Origin: Pecten maximus
Lineage: Eukaryota
Assembly (NCBI RefSeq): GCF_902652985.1
Contig: NC_047028.1
Location: 9,610,001 to 9,674,000 of the forward strand
Reading direction: 5' to 3'
DNA: 64,000 nt
The notes beneath the pieces were generated by a model. The model did not search any database. It was not told the DNA's origin and saw only the letters and a list, made by a program, of their open reading frames with translations. Below are positions 37,970 through 57,290 of the stretch, piece after piece; position 1 is the first letter of the stretch, and the number at the start of each line of letters is the position of its first letter. The position numbers and the translations under genes were made by a program.

Positions 37970-39344
37970 TTCTCAGCCCCTATATGATATATCCTGGGTG
38001 TTTGAAGTAATAAGACCCACTAGCTGTACTATCTCAGCCCTCTATATGATACCCTGGGTGTTTGAAGTAATAAGACCCACTAGCTGTACTATCTCACCCT
38101 CTATATGATACCCTGGGTGTTTGAAGTAATAAGACCCACTAGCTGTACTATCTCAGCCCTCTATATGATACCCTGGGTGTTTGAAGTAATAAGACCCACT
38201 AGCTGTACTATCTCACCCTCTATATGATATATCCTGGGTGTTTGAAGTAATAAGACCCACTAGCTGTACTATCTCACCCTCTATATGACACCCTAGGTGT
38301 TTGAAGTAATAAGACCCACTAGCTGTACTATCTCAGCCCTCTATATGATACCCTGGGTGTTTGAAGTAATAAGACCCACTAGCTGCAATATATATCTCAC
38401 CCTCTATATAATACCCTGGGTGTTTGAAGTAATAAGACACACTAGCTGTACTATCTCAGCCCCTCTATATGATATCCTGGGTGTTTGAAGTAATAAGACA
38501 CACTAGCTGTACTATCTCACCCTCTATATAATACCCTGGGTGTTTGAAGTAATAAGACCCACTAGCTGTACTATCTCAGCCCCTCTATATAATATCCTGG
38601 GTGTTTGAAGTAATAAGACACACTAGCTGTACTATCTCACCCTCTATATGATACCCTAGGTGTTTGAAGTAATAAGACCCACTAGCTGTACTATCTCAGC
38701 CCCTCTATATGATACCCTGGGTGTTTGAAGTAATAAGACACACTAGCTGTACTATCTCAGCCCCTCTATATGATACCCTGGGTGTTTGAAGTAATAAGAC
38801 CCACTAGCTGTACTATCCCAGCCCTCTATATGATACCCTAGGTGTTTGAAGTAATAAGACCCACTAGCTGTACTATCTCAGCCCTCTATATGATACCCTG
38901 GGTGTTTGAAGTAATAAGGCCCACTAGCTGTACTATCTCAGCCCTCTATATGATACCCTGGGTGTTTGAAGTAATAAGGCCCACTAGCTGTACTATCCCA
39001 GCCCTCTATATGATACCCTAGGTGTTTGAAGTAATAAGACCCACTAGCTGTACTATCTCAGCCCTCTATATGATACCCTGGGTGTTTGAAGTAATAAGAC
39101 CCACTAGCTGTACTATCTCAGCCCTCTATATGATACCCTGGGTGTTTGAAGTAATAAGACACACTAGCTGTACTATCTCAGCCCTCTATATGATACCCTG
39201 GGTGTTTGAAGTAATAAGACCCACTAGCTGTACTATCTCACCCTCTATATGATACCCTGGGTGTTTGAAGTAATAAGACCCACTAGCTGTACTATCTCAG
39301 CCCCTCTATATGATACCCTGGGTGTTTGAAGTAATAAGACCCAC
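37970..39344. repeat. 59-61 bp satellite, left part (interrupted by the transposon)
   Basis: Unit CTCAGCCCTCTATATGATACCCTGGGTGTTTGAAGTAATAAGACCCACTAGCTGTACTAT; stops mid-unit at GACCCAC. Confidence 0.97.
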
Positions 39345-39357
39345 CCCAAACAGAAAT

Positions 39358-39612
39358 CGCAAGCTTGCGAATGATGTTAAATGCAAGCTTGCGGCAAGCT
39401 TGCGGCAAGCTTGATCTGCGAGCTAGGAATTGGAACCTCGCGGCAAGCTAGTAAATGAAACCTCGCGGCAAGCTTAATCCGCAAGCTTAATCCGCAAGCT
39501 TGCGGCAAGCTTAATCCGCAAGCTTAATCCGCAAGCTTGCGGCAAGCTTAATCCGCAAGCTTGCGGCAAGCTTAATCCGCAAGCTTGCGGCAAGCTTAAT
39601 CCGCAAGCTTGC
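39358..39612. repeat. Left subterminal repeat array of the transposon (GCAAGCTTGC / GCAAGCTTAATCC)
   Basis: Roughly 17 copies of GCAAGCT(T), many spaced 11-13 bp apart. Confidence 0.92.
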
Positions 39613-40327
39613 TGAAAATCTATAATAAATAAAACGAACATCAACTAAAAATTCTTAATAGAACTGTATTTCTTACTTATTCATGAGATCTGTTACATAA
39701 AATATCTAATTCATTCAGTAATCAGGTCTGCTTTTAAATAATAACCATTCTTGTAATCTGGTTATATTAAAGGCAAGATCACAACTCTTTACTCCTTCAA
39801 TACTCAAACTTAGGCCGGAAATCCCTCATTATAAAACAAAGGAAATAGTGTTGATCATAATAATTCTCCATTCAAAATATTTTTACCATAGAAACAATTC
39901 AGCTTGGACTTTCCAAATTTCTGAAGTAATTACCAAATCTTCAAAATATTACCAAACTAATTACATCAAATTTAAATGTAAAAATAATAAAATCCATCCA
40001 TAATGAGATAATCAGGGACATGAAAGTACACGTTTGTATATGCATGACCCAAAGAAATGTACACAACCTTACAATTTATGAAGTGTGTATGTGTCCCAAC
40101 AACACATACATTGTGTATATATATATAGTATCAAAATGCAGGAAAATGTAAAAATGTAATCTTAATAAGAAATTTCATATTCAATTGCCAATTCAAATGC
40201 ATGTCACATATATATAAAGGCAAACAATTCTATGAGATTGGTTGAAATAATGTCAACAAAAAACAAACAAATTGCAAAATGGCAAGGACTGCTTCTAAGT
40301 AATAAAAAAAAAAAAAAAAACCAATAA

Positions 40328-40888
40328 AAACAAGGCATTGCAAACGATACAAATCGCATGCTAACACATTAACTCTGACGTAAAATAGGGGGTGGGGTTA
40401 TAATTATTGCAGGACATTGAAATAACATCAGTTGTCATTTGCACTGAACTGCAATAGACATGGATGGGCTTATTATCAGGCATGGGCTATCGAGGTATTG
40501 CCATGCTGGACCAATACTATGAAGTTTGGTCAGGATCCATTCAAAAATGAAGTTGCAACAACGCTGACAAAGATTTTTTATAAATAGTAACGGTGACCTT
40601 GACCTTAACCTTGGCGCCCTGAAACACGAACTTGTTTGAGGTATTGCCATGCTTGACCCATATATGAAGTTTGGTCAGGATCCGTTCAAAAATGAAGTCA
40701 CAAGAGTGCTGACAAAGATTTTCTATAAATAGTAACGGTGACCTTGACCTTGGTACCCTGAAACATGAACTTGTTCGAGGTATTCCCATGCTGGACCCGT
40801 ATATGAAGTTTGGTCAGGATCTGTTCAAAAATGAAGTCCGAACGAACGCTATATCCCCTCCCCGACTTTCGTCGCGAGGGGATAATAA
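40328..40888 (-). mobile_element. HINE-like element nested in the transposon; a further decayed one adjoins to ~41200
   Basis: Minus-strand start TTATTATCCCCTCGCGACGAAAGTCGGGAGGGGATATAG (hairpin). ~140-bp internal repeats containing GTGACCTTGACCTT and ATGAAGTTTGGTCAGGATC. Confidence 0.65.
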
Positions 40889-41475
40889 CAAGAGCCTCGC
40901 AGGGGTAAGCATGATACCCCATCATAGTAATAGTTGAAACATGAGCCAAAAAATAGTAATATATGTTAAACATAATTGCTTCTTTTTGTATTATGTAAAA
41001 TCTTAGAGAAATTGAATGAAAAATAGGAAACTTTAAAAACTGAGGAGTGAGGTATTGTGCCATAGAATATTTGTAACAAGTTTCATAAAGTCTGTTGATA
41101 ATAAAGGCTAGAGAGCGTAACGAGGAAAAGTTAACAGACAGCAGACTTACGGACAGCGCAGGGTATCTTATAATATGACCTGTTGTTGATGGGCTTATAA
41201 AAACTACATAGATAAAGATCAAAATTAAAATGCTTAGAAACATAAGGCAACAACCCTATAAAATTTTATGAAAACGGCTAAAAACACAGTGTGAAGAAGC
41301 ATTCAAAGCTTCAAAATGTGATTACTTGATAAGTATATAAATGTGTTCAGACTTTTACAAACATATCAAAACTATGACCTTCAAATAAATATGATTTAGG
41401 CGTTTAAAAATGAAGTAAAAAAGAGACTGGTTCCATCATATGTCCAAAAAGTTAAAATTCATTTTGAGCACACAG

Positions 41476-41868
41476 TCATTTTCCATCGAGATTTCTTGGG
41501 CTACACATTTGCTGTAATGCTCTGCGTGCAGTGGCACATTTGGAATTGATGACATCATTCATCACTGCATCGGTGACTGAACACTGACCAGTGTTTTTCT
41601 TCAAATGTTTGACAGTGTAGGATTTAATTGCAGCAACAACTACAGCTGGCAAGGCTTTTGTTTTTTCTGTTGTCTTGTTATTGTGGGCAGATCGCTGTCC
41701 TTTTGCACTCGACACTGCCAAGATTTCTTTAGTGAAGAAAACTTCTAGCAAGTTTATCAGCAGTTTTCGGGGATTATTCCCTGCCTTCTGCACAACTTGT
41801 GCTAATTGTTGCGGTGTCAAATACACTTGATGGTCAGGCAACAGTTTAATCTTAGGAGCCCCATTCGT
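41476..41868 (-). CDS. BEN-domain exon (exon 7) of the accessory gene
   Basis: TTACAG acceptor; pattern L..LL..FF..E.LA.SS..G.....L....V.AI......I..KC...RR is typical of BEN domains (BANP/E5R/NAC1, Insensitive, BEND5/6). Confidence 0.85.
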   Translation of the reverse strand, partial: TNGAPKIKLLPDHQVYLTPQQLAQVVQKAGNNPRKLLINLLEVFFTKEILAVSSAKGQRSAHNNKTTEKTKALPAVVVAAIKSYTVKHLKKNTGQCSVTDAVMNDVINSKCATARRALQQMCSPRNLDGK

Positions 41869-44800
41869 CTGTAATTGAATTAAAATGAAAATGCTAAAAA
41901 TACAAGAATCAACCAAATAGATTTATCATGGCCGTTTCATTAAATGAACTTATTCAATTAATTTACCTGCAACAAGATTTGTGATACACATTACAATTGA
42001 AAGATGTAATTGATGCTAAATGCAAATCAAAAGACTGGGTACATTAGGGCTATTCCAATGAGATATCCTACTTGAGATATTCATGAAAAAATAAGTACTA
42101 TGGGTGGACTGTTTTAACTAAATCATTCCTATGAGTGGTCAATGTTGACAAACCTTGAGTCCACCTTTTGGTTAGGAATTTTACTTGAGTGGCCTTAATC
42201 ATACTTACAGTCACTGCTTCCTCCCATGGTGCTAAACAGTTAATATTCAAATTCTCGCTGCAATTTCTGTTCTCCTCTGTTGGTGTTGACAGAGTTTCTG
42301 GTTCTGGACTTTGTTGTTCTTGAACAGCCAGAGGACTTTGTTGTTCTTGAACAGCCAGGGGACTTTGTTGTTCTTGAACAGCCAGGGGACTTTGTTGTTC
42401 TGGAACAGCCAGGGGACTTTGTTGTGCTCCTAGTGCTGCAGTTACTTTTGCTTTGAAGAGTGATCTTGGTTTTGGCTTAACCAATAACGGCATTCGGGAC
42501 ATGGATTCCTAGGAACAAAAGTATTCAATAAACATTGTACTTTTAGGAAATATTTGCACACTTAAAACTAAATACATGTATAATCAAAACGAGCATTCAT
42601 ACAGTTAAGTCATTTAATTACATTTAATGAAAGGAAGAAATAGGCAGAAAACATATTAATTTTATTTAATGAAAGGAAGAAATAGGCAGAAAACCTTAAG
42701 TCTATCAAATGGTTATGGAGAGTCATCATAGTGGTCAAAATAGAGTTGAGCATGCAAATACCTCTGGAGTAGAGGAAAGGTAGGCAGCTGCATCATCTTC
42801 TGTACTAGTTGTGTTCAAGATCCTTTGACTGAGGAAAAAACATTATTAAATAAAAACAACTTTTTACTGCAGGGCAGAGCATTTAATTCCATGCTAAAGA
42901 ACAGAAATATTCATGATTTATTTACCATAATGAATAAAAAACAAAGAAATGCAAAATGCTAAGAAAAACAGTGCTATGATTATATTAGTTGATGAAAAAG
43001 CAAACAAAGTTTTAAGGAAATGATAACGAGATGAAAATGAGATTAGATAAACACTAAAAACAGCAAGGGATATAACTCTACAAACAACTGTAGAAAATCA
43101 CATTGCCATTATTAAAGGAATACATATGTACATGTCACATTGTGCATGTATCTATATATATTCTCACTTTCATGTAATGTATATTGAATTCTGCTTTCTA
43201 GTATATATATATATATTAGTATCTCTTTATATGGAAAATGTTATAAGGAATCCTTCAAGTATTTCAACCTAACAAAAGAAGTATTTTTACATAATAGTTT
43301 TACATACTGTTTCTGTTCTAATTCTGTATAAAGATCCCTCATGAATCTCAGTTTTCCCGGCGTTACCTGAATACCTGTAACAAAAAGCTTTAATTAAGCA
43401 ATAAGGTTGAACTACATGGTTTTGACAATTGTATTGAGAGATTCCTAAGTCTTTTACACACACACACATATATATATATATTACAGATATCACATTATGC
43501 TGAAATTAAAACAGATTTTTAGCCCACCATCATCAGATGGTGGGCTGTTCAAATCGCCCTGCGTCCGTGGTCCGTCGTCCGTCCCTCCGTCCGTCCCTCC
43601 GTCCGTCCGTCCGTCCCTCCGTCCCTCCGTCCGTAAACAATTCTTGTTATCGCTATTTCTCAGAAAGTACTGAAGGGATCTTTCTCAAATTTCATATGTA
43701 GGTTCCCCTTGGTGCCTAGTTATGCATATTGCGTTTTGAGACCAATTGGATAACAACATGGCCGACAGGCAGCCATCTTGGATTTTGACAAATGAAGTTT
43801 GTTATCGCTATTTCTGAGAAAGTACTGAAGGGATCTTTCTCAAATTTCATATGTAGGTTCCCCTTGGTGCCTAGTTATGCATATTGCGATTTGAGACAAT
43901 CGGAAAACAACTGGATGACAGGCAGCCATCTTGGATTTTGACAATTGAAGTTTGTTATCACTATTTCTGAGAAAGTACTGAATGGATCTTTCTGAAATTT
44001 CATATGTAGGTTTCCCTTGGTGCCTAGTTATGCATATTGCGTTTTGAGACCAATCCGAAAACAACATGGCCGACAGGCAGCCATCTTGGATTTTGACAAT
44101 TGAAGTTTGTTATCGCTATTTCTGAGAATGTACTGAATGGATCTTTCTCAAATTTCATATGTTAGTTTCCCTTGGTGCCTAGTTATGCATATTGTGTTTT
44201 GAGACCAATCTGAAAACAACATGGCCGACAAGCAGCCATCTTGGATTTTGACAATTTAAGTTTGTTATCACTATTTCTGAGAAAGTACTGAATGGATCTT
44301 TCTGAAATTTCATATGTAGGTTCCCCTTGGTGCCTAGTTATGCATATTGCGTTTTGAGACCAATCAGAAAACAACATGGCCGACAGGCAGCCATCTTGGA
44401 TTTTGACAATTGAAGTTTGTTATCGCTATTTCTGAGAAAGGACTGAATGGATCTTTCTCAAATTTCATATGGAGGTTCCCCTTGGTGCCTCGTTATGCTA
44501 ATTGCATTTTGAGATCAATTGGAAAACAATATGGCCGACAGACCGCCATCTTGGATTTTGACAATTGAAGTTTGTTATCTCTATTTCTCAAAGTACTGAA
44601 TGGATCTTTCTCAAATTTCATAAGTAGGTTCCCCTTGGTCCCTTGTATTGCATTTTTGGACCAGTCTGTCCTGAAAACAACCTGGCAAACAAACAGCCAT
44701 TATCGTTAAATCTCAAATTTCTTATATAGCTAGGATTCCCTTGTTTGAAAAGTACTGGAGGGATTTCTCAATTTGCACAGATTAGTAAAATGAAGGGAAA

Positions 44801-47469
44801 AGTAGAGAAAAGATCAATCTGACATGGAACCTATGAAGATCATTCAATGGTGGGCGCCAAGATCCCTCTGGGATCTCTTGTTGGTATATATGAATATTTT
44901 CAAAAGAATTTTTATAATACTTTGTGACAAGTTAACAAACACCACTTCTGAGTTAATAATGTAATGGTACTAAAGATACCACCTTAAAAGTATTTAGATA
45001 TATTGTATTTCTATTTGTGTTATAATAGACATGCTTACTACAGTCATTTGGGCCAATACATTCCAGTCTCTGACGCAACTGCTGATTTTCAGCTCTTAAA
45101 GCTGTGTTCTCCCTCTCTAAGGCAGCTAACTGTTCTCTGTGAGATATCAGCGTAGAGAAGTTGTAATCCGGCAATGGGCGACAAGAACTGTAGGGGGATC
45201 TGGAGTAATCCTGGAAGTCTACATGTGAAGGTCTTTGATTTAAGTTGAATGAGCTTGCCATTGGTTCTTGTTGATACATATATTCATATCCAGCAGTTGG
45301 TTGCAATTGTTGTACACATGCTGGCATCTCCTGGTTGTGATGGTCTGAAAAAGTGAAGGAGGCAGAAAACCTGGACTGCTGTTGCAGTTGTTCACCTGGG
45401 GTAATTGTCTCCTGATCTTGATGAGTAGCAGAAATTGGCTGTTTTACAGTTGGACTGTTCATGATCAGGTCATGATCCAGCACAGGTGAATGTGGTGATT
45501 GTAAATCCCTTAATGATTTCTCAGGCACGGATTGTTCAATCTCCTTCTGTTGGTCATGGCGCCTCTTTTCAATAATTTGATTTAGAGATTTGGTGGCTTC
45601 TTCCAACTTCTTTTGGTCAATTTCCTTCTTTCTTTTTTTATTGGTCAACTTTTCCTCCATTGCTTCTGACTCAACAGTTACTTTTTTGTTCTTTGAGATC
45701 TTTTTCCCTTCCTTGACCTTCTGCGACTTTTTCACCATTTCTGCACAAATACCAGTTGATTTAAGTTATATCCACATGCATGATATGAAGCAAATTTTAC
45801 AAATTACAATTATAATTATCATACACAAACATAATCTATCTTTATTTTACAATATTAAAGTACATGTTACAGTATATATTATGATCTACTTTGACAATGA
45901 TGAAAAACCAAAACTAATTTCAAATTTGTATTTTGTGGCAATAACAGTGACCTTGACCTTGGCATTCTGAAACACAAACTTCCGTGTTCTCTACAGTCTA
46001 CACTATTCATCCCAGATTTCAAAGTGAGAACTTTTGGGATTAATATATGTAAAATGACTTAGAATTACATAGACCAAGCCCCAAAATTACTCTGACAGTA
46101 CAAACAGTATTAATAAAAAAAACTTACTTGTTGACAAAGGGGTACTTTCCTTCTCAGATTCATCACTTGTCTCGGAATTGCTTTCATCATGTTTGTCATT
46201 ATGATCAGAAGATCTAGAGCTAGCTTGTTGCAATTGCAACTTCTGTCGCTGATCCATCTGTAGTTCAAGATCTTTCTTGGATTCTGACAAAAGAAAAGAC
46301 AATTTCTCAATAAAATTTGTTCAATATATTGTGAAAAAAGATATGGTAAATGCATAGTACTTTTTGTTTTTCGAAAAGAAATATTGTACTGATTTTGATA
46401 TATAAATTCAGAAATATGTATGTAATATTGAGTGGTCACTCGCCAACTAGATTGCAGACCAATATACTTCCACATCGGTACAATTAAAGAAAGTAAGAAT
46501 CAGATACTGGTAGTTATTTTCCAAAAAATATTTCATTGCATGTCGAAATTAATAGCCTACATTAACAAGCCAAAGGATATATATTCCATCATATAATATT
46601 TTTTCACATTTCATGCATTTCAGTGAATTTTTATGATATCATTTTCAATGTAACAATTGTAAGCTCATTTACCTGATATTTTACTTACTTTTCCCCTGCT
46701 TTATTCTTACTTACAAATTTCATTGCTAATTTTAAAAACTTAAACATGCAAATTTAAATGTCTCTTGAAATCAGCTATAAAAATTTATGCAAATATTATC
46801 AGAGGAATGAGCTAATATTTCTTGACATGTACGTGAAATTTCAAGAAATTACATTGAAAAACGAAGTCATCAATATTAATTGAAAATTTGCCAAAATGCA
46901 TGAAATATACAGATTTCTATATAGTAAAAATAGTCCCTGTGCATGCTTGACCGAATACTTTTGGCACGTAATTTGTAAAGTTTGATTATTTCGAAAACAA
47001 AATTAACCTGGTTAACAGCTCGAAACATATATAGATTTGAATACCTTTAATAATAAAATGTAACCCGGCCGTGCGTAAGGGGCTAGAATCATAAGCCGAT
47101 CTTTCTCTGGCCCTGACACCATATAAATTCATGGGCCTTGCATTTTTTGGCAAATTTGTTGTGGGATGTGTTAAACTAAACTCATGGAAATTTTCAACGA
47201 ATAAATCGATACCGCTATTTGGCCGAATTATTTTCTAACATCCTATTCTGGAGACGTAAGTTTACTAATTGCCATATTGTTTACTTACCGCCAATTTCTA
47301 CAATAACACCGTTCCACAGTCCGTATTTCGGTAATTTTGCGATCACTTCATCCCCTTTCTGATACAGATTAATCTCTTTTCTTGGCTCCTTTATGATGTT
47401 GATATTATTAACACTTGTTGTATTATCATCCCAATCAAACCAACAGAAGAGATTTTGCGTTCGATCCAT
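41476..47469 (-). CDS. Transposon-encoded 621-aa protein (Tudor/PWWP-like N-terminus, coiled coil, C-terminal BEN domain); 7 exons: 47469-47289, 46283-46128, 45740-45039, 43374-43308, 42828-42762, 42508-42209, 41868-41476
   Basis: All introns are GT-AG and phases chain correctly (1,1,1,2,0,0); total 1866 nt with no internal stop. Last exon VYLTPQQLAQV...PRKLLINLLEVFFTKEILAVSSAKG...ALPAVVVAAIK...VINSKCATARR has the BEN-domain pattern. Exon 3 ends in the heptad run LAALERENTALRAENQQLRQRLE. Confidence 0.82.
43517..44882 (+). mobile_element. Complete HINE/DINE-like non-autonomous Helentron inside intron 3 of the BEN gene
   Basis: 5' TTTTAGCCCACCATC..GATGGTGGGCT hairpin/subTIR, (TCCG)n microsatellite, ~6.5 tandem ~154-bp units, 3' subTIR ATGGTGGGC plus hairpin CAAGATCCC..GGGATCTCTTG. 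T-rich insertion site. Confidence 0.85.
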
Positions 47470-47852
47470 TATTTCAATTCGTGATTCTTCGAGAGCGAGC
47501 AAAATGCGACAGTAGAGGTGTGCTGTCCACCGAAATTTGAATCGAGCGGATGTTGATCTGCAGATGCTGCGCATTGGTTATCAGCAGCTCCCCGAGGGCG
47601 CGCCAGTCGTCAGTTCCGGTTTATGGTGTGATAGGCCTCGCACAATTGATACGACGGCATCGATGTTTTCCAAATATTATGATCAACTGACAGAAAATAC
47701 ACTTGAACTGTTGGTGCGTTTATAACTTCTATTATCGACCAACGTTTCCAACCAATCATTGTAAGGACCACGATCATACAAAGAAAACAACGAGGCCTAA
47801 CGTTAGACCTAATGCGACAGGAGATCGGGGTTTCTGTTTCTCTGATTTCGTC
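47470..47852. promoter_or_regulatory. Putative bidirectional promoter between the BEN gene and the transposase
   Basis: 383 bp between divergent ATGs (47469 on -, 47853 on +). Locally CpG-rich, with TGCGCAT, GGCGCGCC and TTCCGGT motifs. Confidence 0.6.
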
Positions 47853-50800
47853 ATGTATAGCAACCGCTTAAAAGATGATGATCAAGTGGCAAGTGTGTCG
47901 AAATCAACGAAATGGCGATTGAAAAAGAAAATTCGTTTACAACCTGAAGATGAACCGCATGACGAGTCCACACTTGATAGCTGCGGCGATAATATGCAGA
48001 CGTAAGAATTCAATCTTTTTGAATGCAAAACATTTTAAATCCCGATTTGGGGCCCAAAATTTGATCAGAATTCGACACTCATTTTCAACAAATCAACAGC
48101 ATTGTTAATACGTGTACTTTGAATTAATTTGGCCATCAATATCACCCCAATGTACAATTTAAGTAACATCAGTACTTGGTATTCAAATGTGAAGGTATAC
48201 CGATATACTCATAAAGCATGCATTTACACTACATTACTTTACATCTTAATGGCATTAAATTAAATTTCATTCATTTTTTTTAGATTTGACTCACCATCCA
48301 CTTCGAAAGTTAATTACAATTGCCGATTTAAGGATGATGACCCCTTTGAAAGTGCACCTAAAACTACAAAATGGCGTTTAAAGAGAAAAGGTGTGATTGC
48401 AGATTTCGATCATCAGGAGAATATTCAGCAAGATGAATTAGCAGGAAATCCTGATGGATTGTAAGACTTTGATTATATATCATATTAATTTTTAGATCCA
48501 ATTTTTCATAATATATTGCAGTTTACATGATGCATACTTTTCATGGTGATCAACTAGCTACAGCTAGTTATTATGTCAATTATTTGTCTTATCTTATTTC
48601 ATAACTTTTTCATACTTCTATAAAAGTTTGATGAATTATAAGATAATTTGTTTGCCTCCAGATATTGTTCAATGTTATCCATTACTTATGTGATCAAAAT
48701 CAGCATTAGGTTCCATGTCAGATAAAGTTAATATTTCTATAAAGAATTGGCCATGATATTGCAATTGCTTAATATAACAACATTAATTGGTATATTCTAT
48801 ATATATGTGTTTGTATAGGATGAAAATTTGTGCAGGTCCAAATATGATGAATAGTTGAATACACAACAATTATTAAAGTACAACACACATAATCTATTGA
48901 GGAGATGTAATGGAACATCTACATTTTGGTGTGTTATTTTTAACACACATAATGAGCGTTAACACATGTATGTACTCTATTCATCACTTTATTCCATTTC
49001 CTTTGTAGGAACCCATCCAAACACTCGCATGTATTGGTGGCAGATCTAGAAAACGATGGTATTTTAGTTGAAGATGTGGAAAACTCTGCAGCTACTACAG
49101 ATTTTGAAAGTGACCAAGAAAATTTCATAGATAATGAAAGTGACCAAGAAAACTGTTTTGACTGTGAAGAAAGCAATTCTGAATGGTTTGAATGTGAACA
49201 TGAAGAATTTCAGAATGAAGAGTTTTCGTGTGACTCAGAAGATGATGGTTGTAAACCTATTTATGAGGGATCATCAACTACAGTAGCCCAGAGTGCTCTT
49301 TTGATTCTGACATTTGCTTTGCGACACAATCTTACTGGTGAATGTCTGTCAGATTTATTGTCATTAATAGCTGTTCATTGTTTAACAACAAATATCATTT
49401 ACTCATCACTGTACAAGTTTAGAGCATATTTCTCTAAATTGAAATCACCGCTGGTATTTCACACATACTGCACAGTTTGTGAATGTTTACTTACGAAAGA
49501 AAACAATGTGTGTCCTAACTGTGAATCTAATGTAAAGGAGAGTAAAAATGTATCTTACTTTGTCGAGATTCCCCTTGCGCAGCAGATACAAAAACTTTTT
49601 GAAAGAAAAACTTTTCACCAAGATTTAAGTCATAGACATACTCGGTCAAAGAAAAAAGAAAACAATATAGAGGATATCTATGATGGTGATTTATATAAAG
49701 AGTTCTCAAAGGAAAATGGTTTTCTTAACAACCCAAATAATCTGTCATTTATGTGGTACACAGATGGTGTGCCTTTATTTAAATCATCCAAAGTTGGTCT
49801 TTGGCCATTATTCCTGTCTATCAATGAACTACCATACCAAGACAGAATGAAACCAGAAAACATGTTGTTTGCCGGTTTGTGGTATGGTAAGTCAAAGCCG
49901 TCTATGTCAGTTTTTCTGAAACCCTTCTATGAAAGTTTAAAGCAAGTGCGTGATGGGGGCATCATGGTTGACTGTGGACACTGTGCAGAATGTTTTACTG
50001 TTCGGGGTATTTTGTTGTGTGGTACATGTGATTTGCCAGCAAAATGCTTAATGATGAACATGTCTCAGTTCAATGGCAAATTTGGGTGTCCTAGATGCAA
50101 ACAAGAAGGACTTGTTGTAAAAACTGGCAAGGGTCACACTCGTACATTTCCTTTTCAAGCACATTTAGTTAATGGTCCAAAAAGAACCCATGAAGAGTTT
50201 ATTCAACACGGTGAAAATGCCTTTGCGTCAGCAACAACAGTGTTTGGTGTAAAGGGACCATCTTGGTGGGTGAATATTTCTGCAGACATAATACGAGGAA
50301 CTGCCATAGATTACATGCATACAGTTTTGCTAGGTATTGTTCGAAGGCTTTTAAAACTTTGGTTTGATCCTAAATTTTCTAATGAAGCCTATTCAGTCTC
50401 GGGTTTTGTGGACATAGCAGACAAAAGACTAGTTTGTATCAAACCACCCTATTTCATCAAACGCCACCCAAGGAGTATAAAGGAACATTCACAATACTGG
50501 AAAGCCTCTGAGTGTCGTTCATGGCTCTTTTATTATTCAGTGCCAGTTCTCTTTGGTGTACTGAAGAAAGATTTTTTTGAACACTATCTGTTATTTGTAG
50601 ATGCAATCTTCTTGATGAACTTGGATTCCATTTCATCAGAGGAGATGGTGCACTGTGAAGAACTACTTAAAAAAATTCTGTTGTCTTTTTTCCACACTTT
50701 ATGGTGTAAATAATATGTCGGCAAACTTACATCAATTGTTGCATTTACATGAGGTTGTGAGACAATGGTATATTCATGCTTTTCGTTTGAAAGCATGAAT

Positions 50801-51493
50801 GGTAAATTGCTGAAACTCTTTCATGGAACACAGTCTCCAGCTGTTCAAATAGCCAATGCAGTGTCAACCCTTATGAAGTTACCAATCCTAGAACAAAATA
50901 TGAAAGCTGAAGGTGTAGTGTCAGAACTTTATTTTAAACTTTCTAGTACAGGTGATCGACACAAAATTACTGAAACCATATGTGAGGGTGTGCACTTAAT
51001 AGGAGCTACACATTCCAGAAATATTCAACCAAATCATTACATTGCAATTGCTCAATTTTTGAAAAGTGCTCCAGCAAAGTGCTTTGTGTTTTACAGGATT
51101 TTGATAAAAGGATTGATGTTCCATAGCAGTACTTATAAAGTTACATCAAGAAATTCATACACTGTGCAGTTTAAAATGGGAAGTCACACATTTATTGGAC
51201 AAATAGTGTTTTATGTAAAATGCTTCCCAGTTTGTACTTGTAGCGCAAGTTCTTGTAAATGTGCACAATTTATAGCTGTTGTTAGGAAAATATCAGTAGC
51301 AAAAAACATCCTGTGCCACCCTGGTGATGTTGTCACACCAAAACTTGATAACATTATGAGTGGTGTGTTGACTGATAACTATGTAGCAATTCCTGTTACG
51401 GATATATTAGACCTTTGTGCATTTGTTGACTTTTATCGCCAAGATCGAAGGGTATTTGTATGTGTACGACCAAACAGAAAAGAAGCAGATTAA
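47853..51493 (+). pseudogene. CMC/EnSpm (TnpD-like) DDE transposase, ~936 aa; exons 47853-48001, 48284-48460, 49009-51493; disrupted at ~50669-50766
   Basis: Phase-2 GT-AG introns join into the 559-aa ORF. Motifs: CxxC..CxxC, DIYDG, WYTDGVPLFKSS..LWP (first D), CDLPAK (second D), FNG.FGCxxC, IDYMH, WKASE.RSWL, and (after frame correction) LYG..MSANLHQLLHL..SCFSFESMNG (E). There is an extra A in the A7 run 50669-50675 and the expected GPL motif is missing at ~50766, leaving TAA TAA between. Confidence 0.9.
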
Positions 51494-51900
51494 TTAATGG
51501 GAAAACTAGATCACTTGGTAATTTTTTCCCTTTAGGATTAAATTAAAAAACAGTTTGTTCACATATATGACTGATTTTGTAATTTTGACTGTGTATCAGC
51601 TAGGTTTCATATGTAAATATATATATAATACTGAAGTCTGCTTTTTCTTCAGAAAAATGTGAAGATTGATTATTTGACAAATTCTTTTCAGATAATAATT
51701 GAATCTTCGGTTTCTTAATAGATTAAATTAACTTGTGTTCTATATATAGTTTCTATACTTGTCAGTCTTCATATATATAGCATGTATGTATTCATCTTCT
51801 TTCTAGTTGTGCATGTATTTATAAAAAGTTTATATCATAAATATAAAAAAAAATACAATAAATTTATTAAATTGCATCTTTTCTAATTTGTATATATGTA

Positions 51901-52534
51901 TTTATTAGGTCATCTGACTCAAAGGGTCAGGATGACCTATAGTCATTATGCTTTGTCCGTCGTCCGTTGTGCATACGCTTTTCACATTTCAAACTTCTTC
52001 TCAAGTTCCACTGGTGTAATCGATTGAGCTGGCACTTGCCTGGAATGATCCTGAGATAGTCCTGACCAAGTGGGGTTATTTATTGGATCGGTCTGAAATC
52101 CAAGATGACCGCCATCTTGGAGAACACAATTTAAACTTCTTCTCCACTTCCACTTGTGACATTGAGCTGGAAATCGGTGAGGATGTTAAGGGAGGGGAGC
52201 CAACAAAGTGTTATTTTTCAGCCTCATAAAAACTCTGAATATAACATAATATGGCAGCCATTTTATAACATGATTGCGCAATCATGGTTTCCCAGAACAA
52301 CACCTATTTTAAACATCTTCTCAAGTTTCACCAATAACTTAACTGAAATGATCCGGGAATGGTCCTGATCAAGTGTTGTTATTTTTCAGGTAAGTCTAAA
52401 ATCAAGAATAGCTGCCATGGCCAACAGTGCACTATATATACTGGGTACAGAGTATTTGTACTACAATAAATAGTATAAAGGTCATTAGAGTCAGATGTAC
52501 GTTATATGTATAAGGCCCAGGGGCCTCTTGTTTT
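51901..52534 (+). mobile_element. HINE-like element nested 3' of the transposase
   Basis: 5' TTATTAGGTCATCTGAC..GTCAGGATGACCTA hairpin, GTCCGTCGTCCG microsatellite, decayed internal repeats, 3' AAGGCCCAGGGGCCTCTTGTT hairpin. Confidence 0.7.
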
Positions 52535-53102
52535 ATATCTCTACAATAATAGATATGTTGGTCTGGTCCATTTTGCTATATAAGCATTTACAAAACCAAG
52601 AGTCTGCTAGCCAAGCTAGTGAATAATATTTGTTAGATATATATATATATAATTGTAATGAAGTAATAACGACAGTATACAAACTAGTTAATTATTGAAT
52701 TTTCGAGGCAATCTGCCCCTTTATCAATTACATTACATATTACAAACAATCACATATAGACATAGAACATGGAACAGTACGTTACACAAATATTGTTTTG
52801 TTGTGAAAACAATACCCCTCAGCTGATAAATAATTCGTGGAGGGCTTATTATAATTAATAGCAAAACATCTTGGGGTGGTGTACAGATGCCAAAAGAAAA
52901 ATGAATAGATAAATAATATAACTAAAAGGTTTAACAAAATAACATCGCAATATATATGTATATGATATATAGTTATATACATAGGTTATATTTATATATA
53001 TAACATAGTAACACAAATGACGAAGGAAGACAATTTTAGATTATATTTATATACAGATATTTATAATATATTGTTATATATATATATATGGTTATTTTTA
53101 TT

Positions 53103-53570
53103 TGCAAGCCTTAATTATGATATTGTGGTGATTTATATGAATTCATAGTCTTGGCAAGCTTGCAGAAAACCCGCAAGCTTGCAGAAAGACTCGCAAGCTA
53201 ACAGAAATACTCGCAAGCTTGCAGAAATACCCGCAAGCTTGCAGAAAGACACGCAAGCTAACAGAAATACTCGCAAGCTTGCAGAAAGACCCCGCAAGCT
53301 TGCAGAAAGACCCCGCAAGCTTGCAGAAAGACCCCGCAAGCTTGCAGAAAGGCCGCAAGCTTGCAGAAAGACTCCGCAAGCTTGCAAAAAGACCCGCAAG
53401 CTTGCAGAAAGACTCGCAAGCTTGCGATCTTAATTTTGCAAGCTTATAGATAGCTTGCTATATGAACCAAATTCCCTGCGAGCTTGCGCAAGCTTCCTAC
53501 TAGCTTGCATATAGCTTGCAGAGAGTAAAATAAGCTTGCGGCAAGCTCGTCGCAAGCTTGCGGCAAGCAA
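53103..53570. repeat. Right subterminal repeat array of the transposon
   Basis: More than 20 copies or half-copies of GCAAGCTTGC; 53154-53425 has a regular ~20-21-bp period (CGCAAGCTTGCAGAAAGACCC-like). Confidence 0.92.
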
Positions 53571-53585
53571 GTATTTTTGTTTGGG

Positions 53586-56572
53586 ACTAGCTGTACTATC
53601 TCAGCCCCTCTATATGATACCCTGGGTGTTTGAAGTAATAAGACCCACTAGCTGTACTATCTCAGCCCTCTATATGATACCCTGGGTGTTTGAAGTAATA
53701 AGACCCACTAGCTGTACTATCTCAGCCCTCTATATGATACCCTAGGTGTTTGAAGTAATAAGACCCACTAGCTGTACTATCTCACCCTCTATATGATACC
53801 CTGGGTGTTTGAAGTAATAAGACCCACTAGCTGTACTATCTCACCCTCTATATAATACCCTGGGTGTTTGAAGTAATAAGACACACTAGCTGTACTATCT
53901 CAGCCCTCTATATGATACCCTAGGTGTTTGAAGTAATAAGACCCACTAGCTGTACTATCTCAGCCCCTCTATATGATACCCTGGGTGTTTGAAGTAATTA
54001 GACCCACTAGCTGTACTATCTCACCCTCTATATGATACCCTGGGTGTTTGAAGTAATAAGACACACTAGCTGTACTATCTCACCCTCTATATGATACCCC
54101 GGGTGTTTGAAGTAATAAGACACACTAGCTGTACTATCTCAGCCCCTCTATATGATACCCTGGGTGTTTGAAGTAATAAGACCCACTAGCTGTACTATCT
54201 CAGCCCCTCTATATGATACCCTAGGTGTTTGAAGTAATAAGACACACTAGCTGTACTATCCCAGCCCTCTATATGATATCCTGGGTGTTTGAAGTAATAA
54301 GACACACTAGCTGTACTATCCCAGCCCTCTATATGATACCCTGGGTGTTTGAAGTAATAAGACCCACTAGCTGTACTATCTCACCCTCTATATGATACCC
54401 TGGGTGTTTGAAGTAATAAGACACACTAGCTGTACTATCTCAGCCCCTCTATATAATACCCTGGGTGTTTGAAGTAATAAGACACACTAGCTGTACTATC
54501 CCAGCCCTCTATATGATATCCTGGGTGTTTGAAGTAATAAGACACACTAGCTGTACTATCTCAGCCCTCTATATGATATCCTGGGTGTTTGAAGTAATAA
54601 GACACACTAGCTGTACTATCTCAGCCCTCTATATGATATCCTGGGTGTTTGAAGTAATAAGACCCACTAGCTGTACTATCCCAGCCCTCTATATGATACC
54701 CTAGGTGTTTGAAGTAATAAGACCCACTAGCTGTACTATCTCACCCTCTATATGATATCCTGGGTGTTTGAAGTAATAAGACCCACTAGCTGTACTATCT
54801 CACCCTCTATATAATACCCTAGGTGTTTGAAGTAATAAGACACACTAGCTGTACTATCTCACCCTCTATATAATACCCTGGGTGTTTGAAGTAATAAGAC
54901 CCACTAGCTGTACAATCCCAGCCCCTCTATATGATACCCTGGGTGTTTGAAGTAATAAGACCCACTAGCTGTACTATCTCAGCCCTCTATATGATACCCT
55001 GGGTGTTTGAAGTAATAAGACACACTAGCTGTACTATCTCAGCCCCTCTATATGATACCCTGGGTGTTTGAAGTAATAAGACACACTAGCTGTACTATCT
55101 CAGCCCTCTATATGATATCCTGGGTGTTTGAAGTAATAAGACACACTAGCTGTACTATCTCACCCTCTATATGATACCCTGGGTGTTTGAAGTAATAAGA
55201 CCCACTAGCTGTACTATCCCAGCCCTCTATATGATATCCTGGGTGTTTGAAGTAATAAGACACACTAGCTGTACTATCTCACCCTCTATATGATACCCTG
55301 GGTGTTTGAAGTAATAAGACCCACTAGCTGTACTATCTCACCCTCTATATGATACCCTGGGTGTTTGAAGTAATAAGACACACTAGCTGTACTATCTCAC
55401 CCTCTATATGATACCCTGGGTGTTTGAAGTAATAAGACCCACTAGCTGTACTATCTCACCCTCTATATGATACCCTGGGTGTTTGAAGTAATAAGACCCA
55501 CTAGCTGTACTATCTCAGCCCTCTATATGATATCCTGGGTGTTTGAAGTAATAAGACACACTAGCTGTACTATCTCACCCTCTATATAATACCCTGGGTG
55601 TTTGAAGTAATAAGACACACTAGCTGTACTATCTCAGCCCCTCTATATAATACCCTAGGTGTTTGAAGTAATAAGACCCACTAGCTGTACTATCTCACCC
55701 TCTATATGATACCCTAGGTGTTTGAAGTAATAAGACCCACTAGCTGTACTATCCCACCCTCTATATGATACCCTAGGTGTTTGAAGTAATAAGACACACT
55801 AGCTGTACTATCTCAGCCCCTCTATATGATACCCTGGGTGTTTGAAGTAATAAGACACACTAGCTGTACTATCCCACACCTCTATATCACACCCTAGGTG
55901 TTTGAAGTAATAAGACCCACTAGCTGTACTATCTCAGCCCCTCTATATGACACCCTGGGTGTTTGAAGTAATAAGACCCACTAGCTGTACTATCTCACCC
56001 TCTATATGATACCCTAGGTGTTTGAAGTAATAAGACACACTAGCTGTACTATCTCACCCTCTATATGATACCCTGGGTGTTTGAAGTAATAAGACCCACT
56101 AGCTGTACTATCTCAGCCCTCTATATGATACCCTGGGTGTTTGAAGTAATAAGACCCACTAGTTGTACTATCTCAGCCCTCTATATGATATCCTGGGTGT
56201 TTGAAGTAATAAGACCCACTAGCTGTACTATCTCAGCCCTCTATATGATACCCTGGGTGTTTGAAGTAATAAGACACACTAGCTGTACTATCTCACCCTC
56301 TATATGATACACTGGGTGTTTGAAGTAATAAGACCCACTAGCTGTACTATCTCAGCCCCTCTATATGATACCCTAGGTGTTTGAAGTAATAAGACACACT
56401 AGCTGTACTATCTCACCCTCTATATGATACCCTGGGTGTTTGAAGTAATAAGACACACTAGCTGTACTATCTCACCCTCTATATGATACCCTAGGTGTTT
56501 GAAGTAATAAGACCCACTAGCTGTACTATCTCAGCCCCTCTATATGACACCTTTGGAGTTTGGAGTAATAAG
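53586..56572. repeat. 59-61 bp satellite, right part (~50 units)
   Basis: Resumes at ACTAGCTGTACTATC exactly where the left array stopped, apart from the AC duplication. Confidence 0.97.
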
Positions 56573-57290
56573 ATATTGAAAATGGTTGTTTGTAAATGCA
56601 TATAAATGAATGTTGGATGATTAAGTTCCAAATAACACTTCTCATTAGATGCCCACATAGCTAGATGTTCAATAATGCAAGTGCCCTTCTCCAGTTTCTG
56701 ATAGGAATGAATTATAGATCAGACTAATGTGGCAGATGATACAGGACTTCTAGCTAGGTAGTATGTACATATATGTTTGTGTTATAGGTTTTGTGCCAAT
56801 TATAATATTTGTTTGTTTACTGGGTTTATCACTTTATGATTAAGTGGGATAATTTTGTGGCAGATTATACGTGTAGCAGCTGTTGGCTTCCACACTGACC
56901 ACATGTACATAAGGGAAGGGTCCATCACATGCTATTTAGAACAATTAGGTTAACAATAATTGTTTTGCCTATACAGTTACAACCACAACACAAACACTGG
57001 ACAGTCTGTGGTCCCAGCTACCAGAGAAACACCAGTCATGCATCAGATCTTTAATTTATGATGAATGGACTGGCCAGCAGACTAGAGGCATTAGGGTTAT
57101 ATTGAACACCTAGCTCTGTAAATTGGGATGATCTGGAGTGTTAATGAGATTTGAAGAAATTCTAAAAAAAACAATAGAAAATGCAGACATAAGGAAACTA
57201 TTAATTCTCACCTAAATCAATAAAATGAGGAAAAACCATAGTAAAAATTACACAGCAAATCAGACCAGGTGTTCTGGAAGGGTAAGCGTC

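What the first reader, a model, noticed from the sequence alone, without database searches (positions are those of the whole stretch)
39345..53585. Two-gene CMC/EnSpm transposon encoding its own BEN-domain chromatin factor: candidate animal counterpart of TnpA/anti-silencing systems
Seen: an element bounded by TIRs and a TSD contains, head-to-head with a CACTA-type DDE transposase, an intact 7-exon 621-aa gene. The ORF track shows it only as unrelated fragments. Its product has a beta-barrel-like N-terminus, a basic NLS-like stretch (NKKRKK), a coiled coil and a C-terminal BEN domain. Known: plant En/Spm elements need a second protein (TnpA) that binds subterminal repeats and modulates element methylation. 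BEN domains are sequence-specific DNA-binding modules of chromatin and insulator factors (BANP, BEND3, Insensitive). BEN domains have been noted in viruses and mobile elements, so the link may not be wholly new. Inference: this is a three-part system (transposase, BEN factor, arrays of its binding site) in which the BEN protein does end recognition/synapsis or protects the element from silencing. Such elements could also be a source of lineage-specific BEN-solo genes in invertebrates.
Basis: partly seen in the sequence, partly recalled or inferred. Interest (0 to 1): 0.88.

Follow-up and report, generated by a model that had tools for sequence, protein, structure and literature searches.

The report
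Scallop CACTA transposon with BEN partner gene
A 14-kb jumping gene in a scallop-like genome carries a second, spliced gene for a BEN-type DNA-binding protein beside its (here broken) transposase; the same pairing recurs in many distant relatives, so the BEN gene belongs to the element.

Summary
Window 39345-53585 is a 14,241-bp CMC/EnSpm ("animal CACTA") transposon with CCC...GGG 13-bp TIRs and a 2-bp duplication (AC). It sits in a 60-bp satellite and has 21 perfect GCAAGCTTGC palindromes, all subterminal. It holds a Transposase_21 gene. Head-to-head with it (ATGs 383 bp apart) lies a seven-exon, 621-codon gene with all GT-AG junctions, ending in a BEN domain (Pfam above cut-off; model matches NACC1, Insv and BANP BEN-DNA structures).

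One correction: the transposase frame is broken at two places.

The BEN gene is not a one-off capture. In this genome, 11 of 13 relatives of its first exon lie 1.2-4.3 kb from a diverged transposase (28-47% identity), all head-to-head. At least six BEN exons lie 7-13.5 kb away on the matching side. Nine metagenome contigs show the arrangement. One is a complete 12-kb element with CCC TIRs, a 2-bp duplication, a BEN partner and a different palindrome (TTCTAGAA).

That the BEN protein binds the palindromes, like TnpA or the Harbinger Myb partner, is inference only. Splicing is unverified. No searched paper links BEN to CMC transposons. First readers of this scan noted similar pairs elsewhere in this genome.

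The parts
37971..39344 (.). 60-bp satellite, left part of the interrupted array (22.8 units)
   Evidence: TRF; sequence
39343..39344 (.). left copy of the 2-bp target-site duplication (AC)
   Evidence: The satellite unit reads ...GACCCACTAGCTG...; the left flank ends ...GACCCAC and the right flank starts ACTAGCTG
39345..39357 (+). left terminal inverted repeat, CCCAAACAGAAAT
   Evidence: the same start in about 30 related copies
39358..39612 (.). left subterminal array: 8 perfect GCAAGCTTGC palindromes, mostly at a 24-bp period
   Evidence: the palindrome is conserved in the 75%-identical non-autonomous family
41476..41868 (-). partner gene exon 7 (stop codon included): BEN domain
   Evidence: Pfam PF10523; AF2 model pLDDT 87; Foldseek hits to NACC1, Insv, Bsg25A, BANP and BEND6 BEN domains; 80% identical to an Argopecten protein
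42209..42508 (-). partner gene exon 6; contains a 27-bp in-frame tandem repeat at 42306-42425
42762..42828 (-). partner gene exon 5 (67 nt)
   Evidence: Matches the start of the Argopecten model; splice sites
43308..43374 (-). partner gene exon 4 (67 nt); holds a motif conserved in Lingula, Gigantopelta and vertebrate homologues
45039..45740 (-). partner gene exon 3: basic NLS-like stretch (NKKRKK), low-complexity middle, heptad or coiled-coil stretch at its end
   Evidence: (weak YabA/DivIC-type coiled-coil matches)
46128..46283 (-). partner gene exon 2
47289..47469 (-). partner gene exon 1: conserved N-terminal module of unknown fold; ATG at 47469
   Evidence: Relatives beside diverged transposases; 64% identical exon in metagenome locus L099; fold not resolved
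47470..47852 (.). 383-bp spacer between the two divergent start codons; inferred bidirectional promoter
   Evidence: Coordinates; promoter function is inferred only
47853..48001 (+). probable transposase exon 1 (ATG 47853; DDD...TKWRLKKK motif); its GTAAGA donor is in phase with the acceptor at 49009
   Evidence: the motif is shared with the N-termini of Mizuhopecten and Gigantopelta transposase models
48333..48389 (+). second copy of the DDD...TKWRLKRK motif, with no ATG in its open frame; alternative or decayed exon
49009..51493 (+). main transposase coding block (Transposase_21 / DUF1258; D, D, CxxC, HxxxH and E motifs present)
50660..50775 (+). disrupted stretch of the transposase: the frame leaves at an A-run near 50.67 kb and returns near 50.76 kb, where a conserved motif of about four residues is missing; two in-frame stops result
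53154..53561 (.). right subterminal array: 13 perfect GCAAGCTTGC palindromes (20-bp period) plus degenerate half-sites
53573..53585 (-). right terminal inverted repeat (reverse complement CCCAAACAAAAAT)
   Evidence: the right ends of relatives align up to this base
53586..53587 (.). right copy of the 2-bp target-site duplication (AC)
53586..56573 (.). 60-bp satellite, right part of the interrupted array (50 units)
43644..44643 (.). 155-bp tandem repeat nested in intron 3; not part of the system
   Evidence: extremely abundant in all runs laid

Best explanation
This is a two-gene DNA transposon of the CMC (CACTA/EnSpm-Mirage-Chapaev) superfamily, of the animal type with CCC termini and a 2-bp duplication.

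Shown:
- A 14.2-kb unit inserted as one piece into a satellite.
- From a 383-bp central spacer it carries two divergent genes. One is a transposase gene, now disabled by two frame disruptions. The other is a seven-exon accessory gene encoding a conserved N-terminal module, a basic stretch, a heptad stretch and a C-terminal BEN domain.
- The accessory gene is an old, integral part of this transposon clade. Homologous first exons and BEN exons lie in the same head-to-head position beside transposases only 28-47% identical, in this genome and in unrelated metagenome contigs.
- Both ends carry dense arrays of a perfect 10-bp palindrome. The palindrome is kept in a family of about 25-30 non-autonomous 3-kb relatives.

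Inferred:
- The BEN protein acts as a dimer and binds the palindromes, as BEN-solo homodimers bind palindromic sites.
- It thereby marks and pairs the element's ends and recruits or regulates the transposase. This would be the role TnpA plays for En/Spm and the Myb-like protein plays for PIF/Harbinger.
- Each family would carry its own palindrome and its own BEN variant.
For: Anatomy: TIRs, duplication, satellite, palindromes; transposase; seven-exon model, 621 codons; BEN by sequence and by fold.

Recurrence in the same genome: 11 of 13 non-self relatives of exon 1 lie 1.25-4.3 kb from a Transposase_21 match, all head-to-head. Chance is about 8e-4 per hit, from 75 transposase hits in 918 Mb. 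BEN exons lie 7-13.5 kb away, head-to-head, at C1632, C1:39.57 Mb, C17:12.24 Mb, C3:16.57 Mb, C275 and C10:21.9 Mb. All three parts are found at C17:12.24 Mb, C275 and C3:16.57 Mb.

Recurrence elsewhere: BEN pieces lie upstream on the opposite strand in L070, L072, L073, L075, L080 and L085. Exon-1 relatives lie in L099 and L136. L121 is a complete 12.07-kb element with 16-bp CCC TIRs, a TT duplication, TTCTAGAA arrays at both ends, a transposase and an upstream opposite-strand Pfam BEN exon at E 6e-6.

Non-autonomous relatives keep 4-11 (mostly 5-11) GCAAGCTTGC sites at a 25-bp period, although their termini are only about 75% identical.

Literature: animal CACTA elements have CCC termini and 2-bp duplications (PMC1636069). 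BEN-solo homodimers bind palindromes (PMC4281564). The NAC1 BEN domain binds palindromic ACATGT (PMC7764960).
Against: - There is no evidence here of transcription or splicing. The runs laid looked like low-coverage DNA.
- No test of DNA binding was possible, and the dimer prediction gave no verdict.
- The transposase itself could bind the palindromes.
- This lineage is single-copy as a full-length element, and its transposase is broken, so the element is not currently autonomous.
- For many pairs only one of the two partner-gene parts (exon 1 or BEN) was detectable.
- The L121 BEN exon is not alignable to this one pairwise, so independent acquisition of BEN genes by different CMC lineages is not excluded.
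- I could not read the DNA of the other scallop pairs.
Confidence: 0.55

Rival explanations
1. The BEN gene is an integral accessory gene of the element, but it is not an end-binding cofactor. It acts as a transcriptional regulator, copy-number repressor or anti-silencing (boundary) factor. The palindrome arrays are bound by the transposase's own N-terminal region.
For: The architecture evidence is the same as for the best explanation. Known BEN proteins are repressors and insulator factors (PMC4281564). The transposase has a conserved basic N-terminal motif, DDD...TKWRLK(K/R)K, present twice. Maize TnpA also has regulatory roles (PMC1636069).
Against: A perfect 10-bp palindrome repeated 21 times fits a dimeric sequence-specific binder such as BEN. 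No DNA-binding domain was recognised in the transposase N-terminus by Pfam.
Confidence: 0.28
2. In this particular copy the BEN gene now serves the host. It is a transposon-derived gene on its way to domestication, sitting in a dead element.
For: The transposase is broken at two places while all 621 codons of the seven-exon gene are open. It is the only intact member of its close lineage in the assembly. An 80%-identical protein is annotated in another scallop. Related genes look single-copy and conserved in turtles, axolotl and a shark.
Against: Two lesions in 2.6 kb against none in 1.9 kb is not significant (roughly p = 0.3 under equal decay). The copy lies in a satellite array. There is no expression evidence. 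The position of the Argopecten gene relative to TIRs is unknown.
Confidence: 0.12
3. This is a one-off capture of a host BEN gene by a CACTA element (transduplication), as in Pack-CACTA, with no role for the element.
For: CACTA elements can capture host DNA (PMC6379663, listed). This exact lineage is single-copy.
Against: The same head-to-head partner recurs beside many transposases 28-47% identical, in this genome and in metagenome contigs. The whole gene with promoter-proximal exon 1 always sits 1.2-4.3 kb from the transposase.
Confidence: 0.03

Closest known systems
Maize En/Spm (CACTA): TnpD transposase plus TnpA subterminal-repeat-binding protein
   Same: Same transposase superfamily (Transposase_21). 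Both have a second element-encoded protein, short TIRs and dense subterminal repeat arrays at both ends. A two-protein requirement is established for En/Spm (PMC1636069).
   Different: No sequence similarity between the partner and TnpA (no Pfam hit). Here the partner is a separate, divergently transcribed seven-exon gene, not an alternative splice form of one transcription unit. The site is a perfect palindrome. Termini are CCC with a 2-bp duplication, not CACTA with 3 bp.
SmTRC1 and other animal CACTA ('TRC') elements (DeMarco et al. 2006, PMC1636069)
   Same: Animal CMC elements with CCC-starting TIRs, 2-bp duplications and a Transposase_21 domain. That paper proposed that short non-transposase products play a TnpA-like role.
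   Different: The SmTRC1 accessory products come from alternative splicing of the same unit and had no recognisable domain or homologues. Here the partner is a distinct gene with a BEN domain, conserved across families and phyla.
PIF/Harbinger elements: transposase plus Myb-like DNA-binding protein, and their domesticated pair HARBI1/NAIF1 (from my own knowledge of Sinzelle et al. 2008; not checked here)
   Same: A two-gene cut-and-paste element in animals whose second gene encodes a sequence-specific DNA-binding protein that binds subterminal sites and recruits the transposase. It is a precedent for domestication of the partner.
   Different: Different transposase superfamily, and a Myb/SANT domain rather than BEN. 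The function here is untested.
BEN-solo and BTB-BEN factors (Insv, Elba1/2, BEND5/6, NACC1, BANP)
   Same: Same fold (Foldseek probability 1.0, TM 0.6-0.7). A single C-terminal BEN domain preceded by a coiled-coil-like stretch. Known members bind palindromic sites as homodimers.
   Different: Those are host chromatin and transcription factors. This gene lies between transposon TIRs next to a transposase, and has an extra conserved N-terminal module.

Membership tests
CMC (CACTA/EnSpm-Mirage-Chapaev) DNA transposons | Transposase with the Transposase_21 (tnp2) domain | tested here: met
   PF02992 at E 1.2e-14, 54.5 bits against a cut-off of 28.6; 269 relatives at E<=1e-20
CMC (CACTA/EnSpm-Mirage-Chapaev) DNA transposons | [quoted passage not shown] | tested here: met
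   YTDG, CDLPA, CPRC, HQLLH and FE motifs are present and lie in invariant alignment columns. [quoted passage not shown]
CMC (CACTA/EnSpm-Mirage-Chapaev) DNA transposons | Short TIRs starting CAC or, in animals, CCC | tested here: met
   13-bp TIRs starting CCCAAAC; the same ends occur in about 30 relatives; a CCC core is reported for animal elements (PMC1636069)
CMC (CACTA/EnSpm-Mirage-Chapaev) DNA transposons | Target-site duplication of 2-3 bp | tested here: met
   2 bp (AC), read from the register of the interrupted satellite; L121 has TT
CMC (CACTA/EnSpm-Mirage-Chapaev) DNA transposons | Evidence of mobility (several copies at different sites) | tested here: inconclusive
   The full-length lineage is single-copy. 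About 25-30 non-autonomous relatives of about 3 kb, with 75-83% identical ends, lie at dispersed sites.
BEN domain (PF10523) | Sequence match above Pfam's gathering score | tested here: met
   26.0 bits against 23.2, E 1.1e-5, covering profile positions 5-76 of 76
BEN domain (PF10523) | All-helical BEN fold | tested here: met
   Model pLDDT 87.3. Top PDB matches are all BEN domains: NACC1 8yzs (E 3.4e-6, TM 0.71), Insv 4ix7, Bsg25A 4x0g, BANP and BEND6.
BEN domain (PF10523) | Sequence-specific DNA binding | not testable with these tools
   Needs EMSA, DAP-seq or PBM. The homodimer prediction gave no verdict.
En/Spm TnpA protein family | Sequence homology to plant TnpA | tested here: not met
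   No TnpA-type Pfam family hit on any exon at E<=1. The partner is an analogue by position, not a member.
En/Spm TnpA protein family | Made by alternative splicing of the transposase transcription unit | tested here: not met
   The partner lies on the opposite strand with its own start codon, 383 bp from the transposase ATG.
BEN-solo host transcription factors | Single BEN domain with no other catalogued domain | tested here: met
   Only BEN passes a Pfam cut-off across the seven exons.
BEN-solo host transcription factors | A stable host gene outside mobile elements | tested here: not met
   The gene lies between the TIRs of an inserted element, and its relatives sit beside transposases.

The most novel reading that the evidence does not exclude
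A whole clade of animal CMC transposons is a three-part system: a transposase, a coiled-coil BEN partner, and a family-specific palindrome array that the partner reads. These elements, spreading among marine invertebrates, would be the source from which metazoan coiled-coil BEN ('BEN-solo'-like) host factors were repeatedly domesticated. That would include the uncharacterised vertebrate genes found here in turtles, axolotl and shark, in the way HARBI1/NAIF1 arose from Harbinger.
Probability: 0.3. Interest if true: 0.85.

Novelty: new variant of a known kind. Interest (0 to 1): 0.68.

Why it matters
Two-protein cut-and-paste systems are known for plant En/Spm and for PIF/Harbinger. For animal CACTA elements the second protein has been elusive: the SmTRC1 paper found no conserved partner. 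A conserved, recognisable BEN partner gives these elements a testable DNA-recognition component. Each family appears to carry its own palindrome, which gives a natural series of protein-site pairs for working out BEN specificity. It also offers a concrete origin for lineage-specific BEN genes of animals. Finally, it warns annotators that many 'uncharacterised BEN proteins' in invertebrate gene sets may be transposon genes. No paper in the searched library links the BEN domain with EnSpm/CACTA elements.

Tried and rejected
- RNA evidence: the 24 runs found held at most a quarter of the words. The four runs laid gave short contigs collinear with the genome in introns and across an exon edge, plus huge depth on the intron-3 repeat. 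There were no splice joints, so there is no verdict on expression.
The genomic neighbours of the Argopecten, Lingula and Gigantopelta homologues could therefore not be read.
The other scallop pairs are known by coordinates only.
- The search for homologous proteins with the Gigantopelta full-length protein returned only itself.
- Accession numbers of Gigantopelta and Lingula BEN and transposase models are not adjacent, which is uninformative.
- N-terminal exon: the ESM Atlas gave only unnamed clusters. The single-sequence AlphaFold model was poor, pLDDT 47, so the 'beta-barrel' reading is unverified.
- Complex prediction with two copies of the BEN exon gave no verdict, which is evidence neither for nor against dimerisation.
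- No internal homology was found between the 3-kb non-autonomous family and this element beyond the ends.
- No exon-1 or BEN match turned up beside the multi-copy 942-aa transposase family.
- Exons were searched one by one by reference. Only phases, lengths and stop counts were computed.

Full report
**What is there.** The window is G000:C14:9610001-9674000 of a 918-Mb animal assembly in 3,983 contigs. The size, the contig count and the nearest proteins (Argopecten, Mizuhopecten) suggest a pectinid scallop. From memory the figures fit Pecten maximus, but I did not test that.

A 60-bp satellite runs 37971-39344 and resumes at 53586-56573. Between the two parts lies a 14,241-bp insert. It starts CCCAAACAGAAAT at 39345, and the reverse complement of its end at 53585 is CCCAAACAAAAAT. 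The satellite unit reads ...GACCCACTAGCTG.... The left flank ends ...GACCCAC and the right flank starts ACTAGCTG, so two bases (AC) were duplicated.

CCC termini with a 2-bp duplication are what DeMarco et al. described for animal CACTA ('TRC') elements (PMC1636069). The boundaries are independently fixed by about 25-30 dispersed relatives of about 3.0 kb, whose left and right ends (75-83% identical) begin and stop at the same bases. Examples are C5:4184003-4186979 and C2922:1618-4584. These share nothing internal with the element, so they are non-autonomous relatives.

**The ends.** GCAAGCTTGC is a perfect 10-bp palindrome. It occurs 21 times in the 64-kb window: 8 times at 39359-39612 and 13 times at 53154-53561. 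It occurs nowhere else, and shuffles give zero. The spacing is about 24 bp on the left and 20 bp on the right. The non-autonomous relatives keep 4-11 (mostly 5-11) perfect copies at a 25-bp period, although their ends are only about 75% identical overall. The palindrome is therefore the conserved unit.

**The transposase.**
- Window 49034-50713 hits Pfam Transposase_21 (E 1.2e-14) and DUF1258.
- Full-length relatives of 755-845 aa align from 49037 to 51490 at 53-57% identity (62-66% over the best local alignment).
- The nearest named relatives are from Lingula (71% over 590 residues, 84% in the best segment), Mizuhopecten and Gigantopelta.
- A probable first exon runs from the ATG at 47853 to a donor at 48001. 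It carries a DDD...TKWRLKKK motif shared with the Mizuhopecten and Gigantopelta models, and it is in phase with a strong acceptor at 49009.
- A second copy of the motif, without an ATG, lies at 48333-48389.
- The catalytic D, D and E residues and the CxxC and HxxxH motifs are present (definition in PMC12730594).
- The gene is nevertheless broken. Against three homologues the frame leaves at an A-run near 50.67 kb and returns near 50.76 kb, where a conserved four-residue motif is missing. This produces two in-frame stops.
- No close full-length copy exists elsewhere in the assembly. The best are 41-45% identical, plus a 58% fragment on C18.

**The partner gene.** On the minus strand, homology to Argopecten, Lingula and Gigantopelta proteins marks seven coding blocks. 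Canonical splice sites join them in phase:

| Exon | Coordinates (minus strand) |
|---|---|
| 1 | 47469-47289 |
| 2 | 46283-46128 |
| 3 | 45740-45039 |
| 4 | 43374-43308 |
| 5 | 42828-42762 |
| 6 | 42508-42209 |
| 7 | 41868-41476 |

All junctions are GT-AG, most with GTAAG donors and pyrimidine-rich acceptors. There are 621 codons, with the only stop at the end.

- Exon 7 hits Pfam BEN above the gathering score.
- Folded with 28 homologues, exon 7 gives a confident model (pLDDT 87).
- The best PDB matches of that model are all BEN domains bound to DNA: NACC1, Insv, Bsg25A, BANP and BEND6.
- Exon 3 holds NKKRKK and ends in a heptad-like stretch with weak matches to coiled-coil families.
- The fold of exon 1 could not be determined.
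- The two start codons face away from each other, 383 bp apart.

**Is the partner part of the element?** This was the key question, and the answer is yes.

Same genome, exon 1:
- A 62-residue query of exon 1 finds 13 other places in the genome.
- Eleven of them lie 1.25-4.3 kb from a Transposase_21 match, and every one is head-to-head.
- With 75 transposase hits in 918 Mb, chance proximity is about 8e-4 per hit.
- These transposases are only 28-47% identical to the one here. They include a family of at least six copies with 811-813-aa open frames.

Same genome, BEN:
- BEN searches (Pfam model; a profile of distant BEN exons) place BEN exons 7-13.5 kb from transposases, on the side and strand expected for a head-to-head gene.
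- The sites are C1632, C1:39.57 Mb, C17:12.24 Mb, C3:16.57 Mb, C275 and C10:21.9 Mb.
- At C17:12.24 Mb, C275 and C3:16.57 Mb all three parts are seen in the right order.

Outside this genome:
- A scan of metagenome contigs with a transposase profile returned 80 loci.
- Six carry a BEN-like piece upstream on the opposite strand: L070, L072, L073, L075, L080 and L085.
- Two carry an exon-1 relative there: L099 (64% identical) and L136.
- L121 is a complete 12.07-kb element. It has 16-bp TIRs starting CCC, a TT duplication, arrays of the palindrome TTCTAGAA at both ends, a transposase 32% identical to this one, and an upstream opposite-strand exon that passes Pfam BEN (E 6e-6).
- Other CMC loci in that set carry their own palindromic arrays: TTCCATGGAA, GTTCATGAAC, GACCATGGTC and TACTATAGTA.

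A one-off capture is thus excluded for practical purposes. Because the L121 BEN exon cannot be aligned pairwise to this one, I cannot say whether all BEN partners descend from one acquisition.

**How it most likely works.**
- Shown: the parts, their order, their conservation, and the BEN fold.
- Established elsewhere: En/Spm needs two element-encoded proteins, one of which binds subterminal repeats. BEN-solo proteins bind palindromes as homodimers (PMC4281564). The NAC1 BEN domain binds palindromic ACATGT.
- Inferred: the partner dimerises, reads the family's palindrome arrays, and so marks or pairs the ends and recruits or regulates the transposase. The 3-kb relatives would be mobilised in trans.

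I give the architecture about 0.9 and the end-binding role about 0.55. The main rival (0.28) keeps the architecture but makes the BEN protein a regulator or boundary factor, with the transposase binding the arrays. For this single copy, with a dead transposase and an open partner gene, incipient domestication is possible (0.12). However, two lesions against none is not significant.

**Relatives beyond transposons.** HMMER against 1.8 billion representatives found 62 relatives of the BEN exon. They include Argopecten (80%), Lingula (65%), Gigantopelta (46%; 432 aa, sharing the N-terminal module, basic stretch, coiled-coil motif and BEN) and Sinanodonta. They also include proteins of about 500-680 aa in turtles, axolotl and a shark (about 47%) that share the coiled-coil, the short conserved motif of exon 4 and the terminal BEN. 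The turtle cluster has one gene per species, which looks like a host gene. The direction of descent is open.

**Novelty.** Searches of the paper library for 'BEN domain' with CACTA, EnSpm, transposase, second ORF or bivalve found no description of BEN partners in CMC elements. The only hits concern unrelated mentions, or a BEN-like domain in bacterial Tn3 transposases. Repbase entries could not be checked.

First readers of this scan had already noted similar BEN-transposon pairs on other DNA of this genome. Those notes gave me the lead to cross-reference coordinates. I could partly check one: a Pfam BEN hit at C14:1345301 falls in the noted Tc1 region. I could not confirm the one on the 942-aa family.

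I class the finding as a new variant of a known kind: a two-component CACTA system whose second component is a BEN protein.

**Limits.** The dimer prediction gave no verdict.

Noticed in passing
G000 places (e.g. C5:4184003-4186979, C2922:1618-4584, C11:4005505-4008478); loci L037-L065: A family of about 25-30 non-autonomous elements of about 3.0 kb shares both ends of this element (75-83% identity, same CCCAAACAGAAAT start) and 4-11 (mostly 5-11) GCAAGCTTGC sites at a 25-bp period. It shares no internal sequence with the element.
   Followed up: partly
window 49751-51490 compared with P0095 (Lingula anatina LOC106151541): The closest named transposase is from a brachiopod (71% over 590 aa, 84% in the best segment), closer than the scallop Mizuhopecten model (53-61%). 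The Lingula BEN homologue is 65% identical. This hints at horizontal spread among marine invertebrates.
   Followed up: no
window 43644-44643 (also 40490-40850, inverted): A 155-bp tandem repeat sits in intron 3 of the BEN gene, with related 139-bp units downstream of the gene in opposite orientation. Its summed contig depth in all four runs laid was 10^4-10^5, so it is a very abundant dispersed or satellite repeat.
   Followed up: no
window 42306-42425: A 27-bp (nine-codon) tandem repeat of 4.4 copies, 97% identical, lies inside exon 6 of the BEN gene and is in frame. The Argopecten protein has far fewer units, so this is a young coding minisatellite.
   Followed up: no
window 47874-47930 and 48333-48389: The transposase's N-terminal DDD...TKWRLK(K/R)K motif occurs twice, 460 bp apart. 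Both copies have phase-2 GTAAGA donors compatible with the same acceptor at 49009. Only the first has an ATG. This is a duplicated or alternative first exon.
   Followed up: partly
L121:358-12431; L123, L125, L131, L137, L145: Metagenome CMC elements each carry arrays of their own short palindrome near an end: TTCTAGAA, TTCCATGGAA, GTTCATGAAC, GACCATGGTC and TACTATAGTA. Palindromic subterminal arrays seem general in this clade.
   Followed up: partly
G000:C14:11.73-11.88 Mb and contig C3597: A cluster of many degenerate BEN-exon, exon-1-like and transposase fragments. C3597 appears to repeat the same region. It is possibly a graveyard or tandem amplification of related elements, or a haplotig.
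   Followed up: no
P0007-P0015, P0020 (turtles, axolotl, sixgill shark): Uncharacterised vertebrate proteins of about 500-680 aa share the coiled-coil, the exon-4 motif and the terminal BEN domain with the transposon partner (about 47% identity in BEN). The turtle cluster has one gene per species.
   Followed up: partly
G000:C14:34936669-34937234: A 67-80% identical, stop-ridden fragment of exon 3 of the partner gene. It is a decayed relative of this lineage.
   Followed up: no
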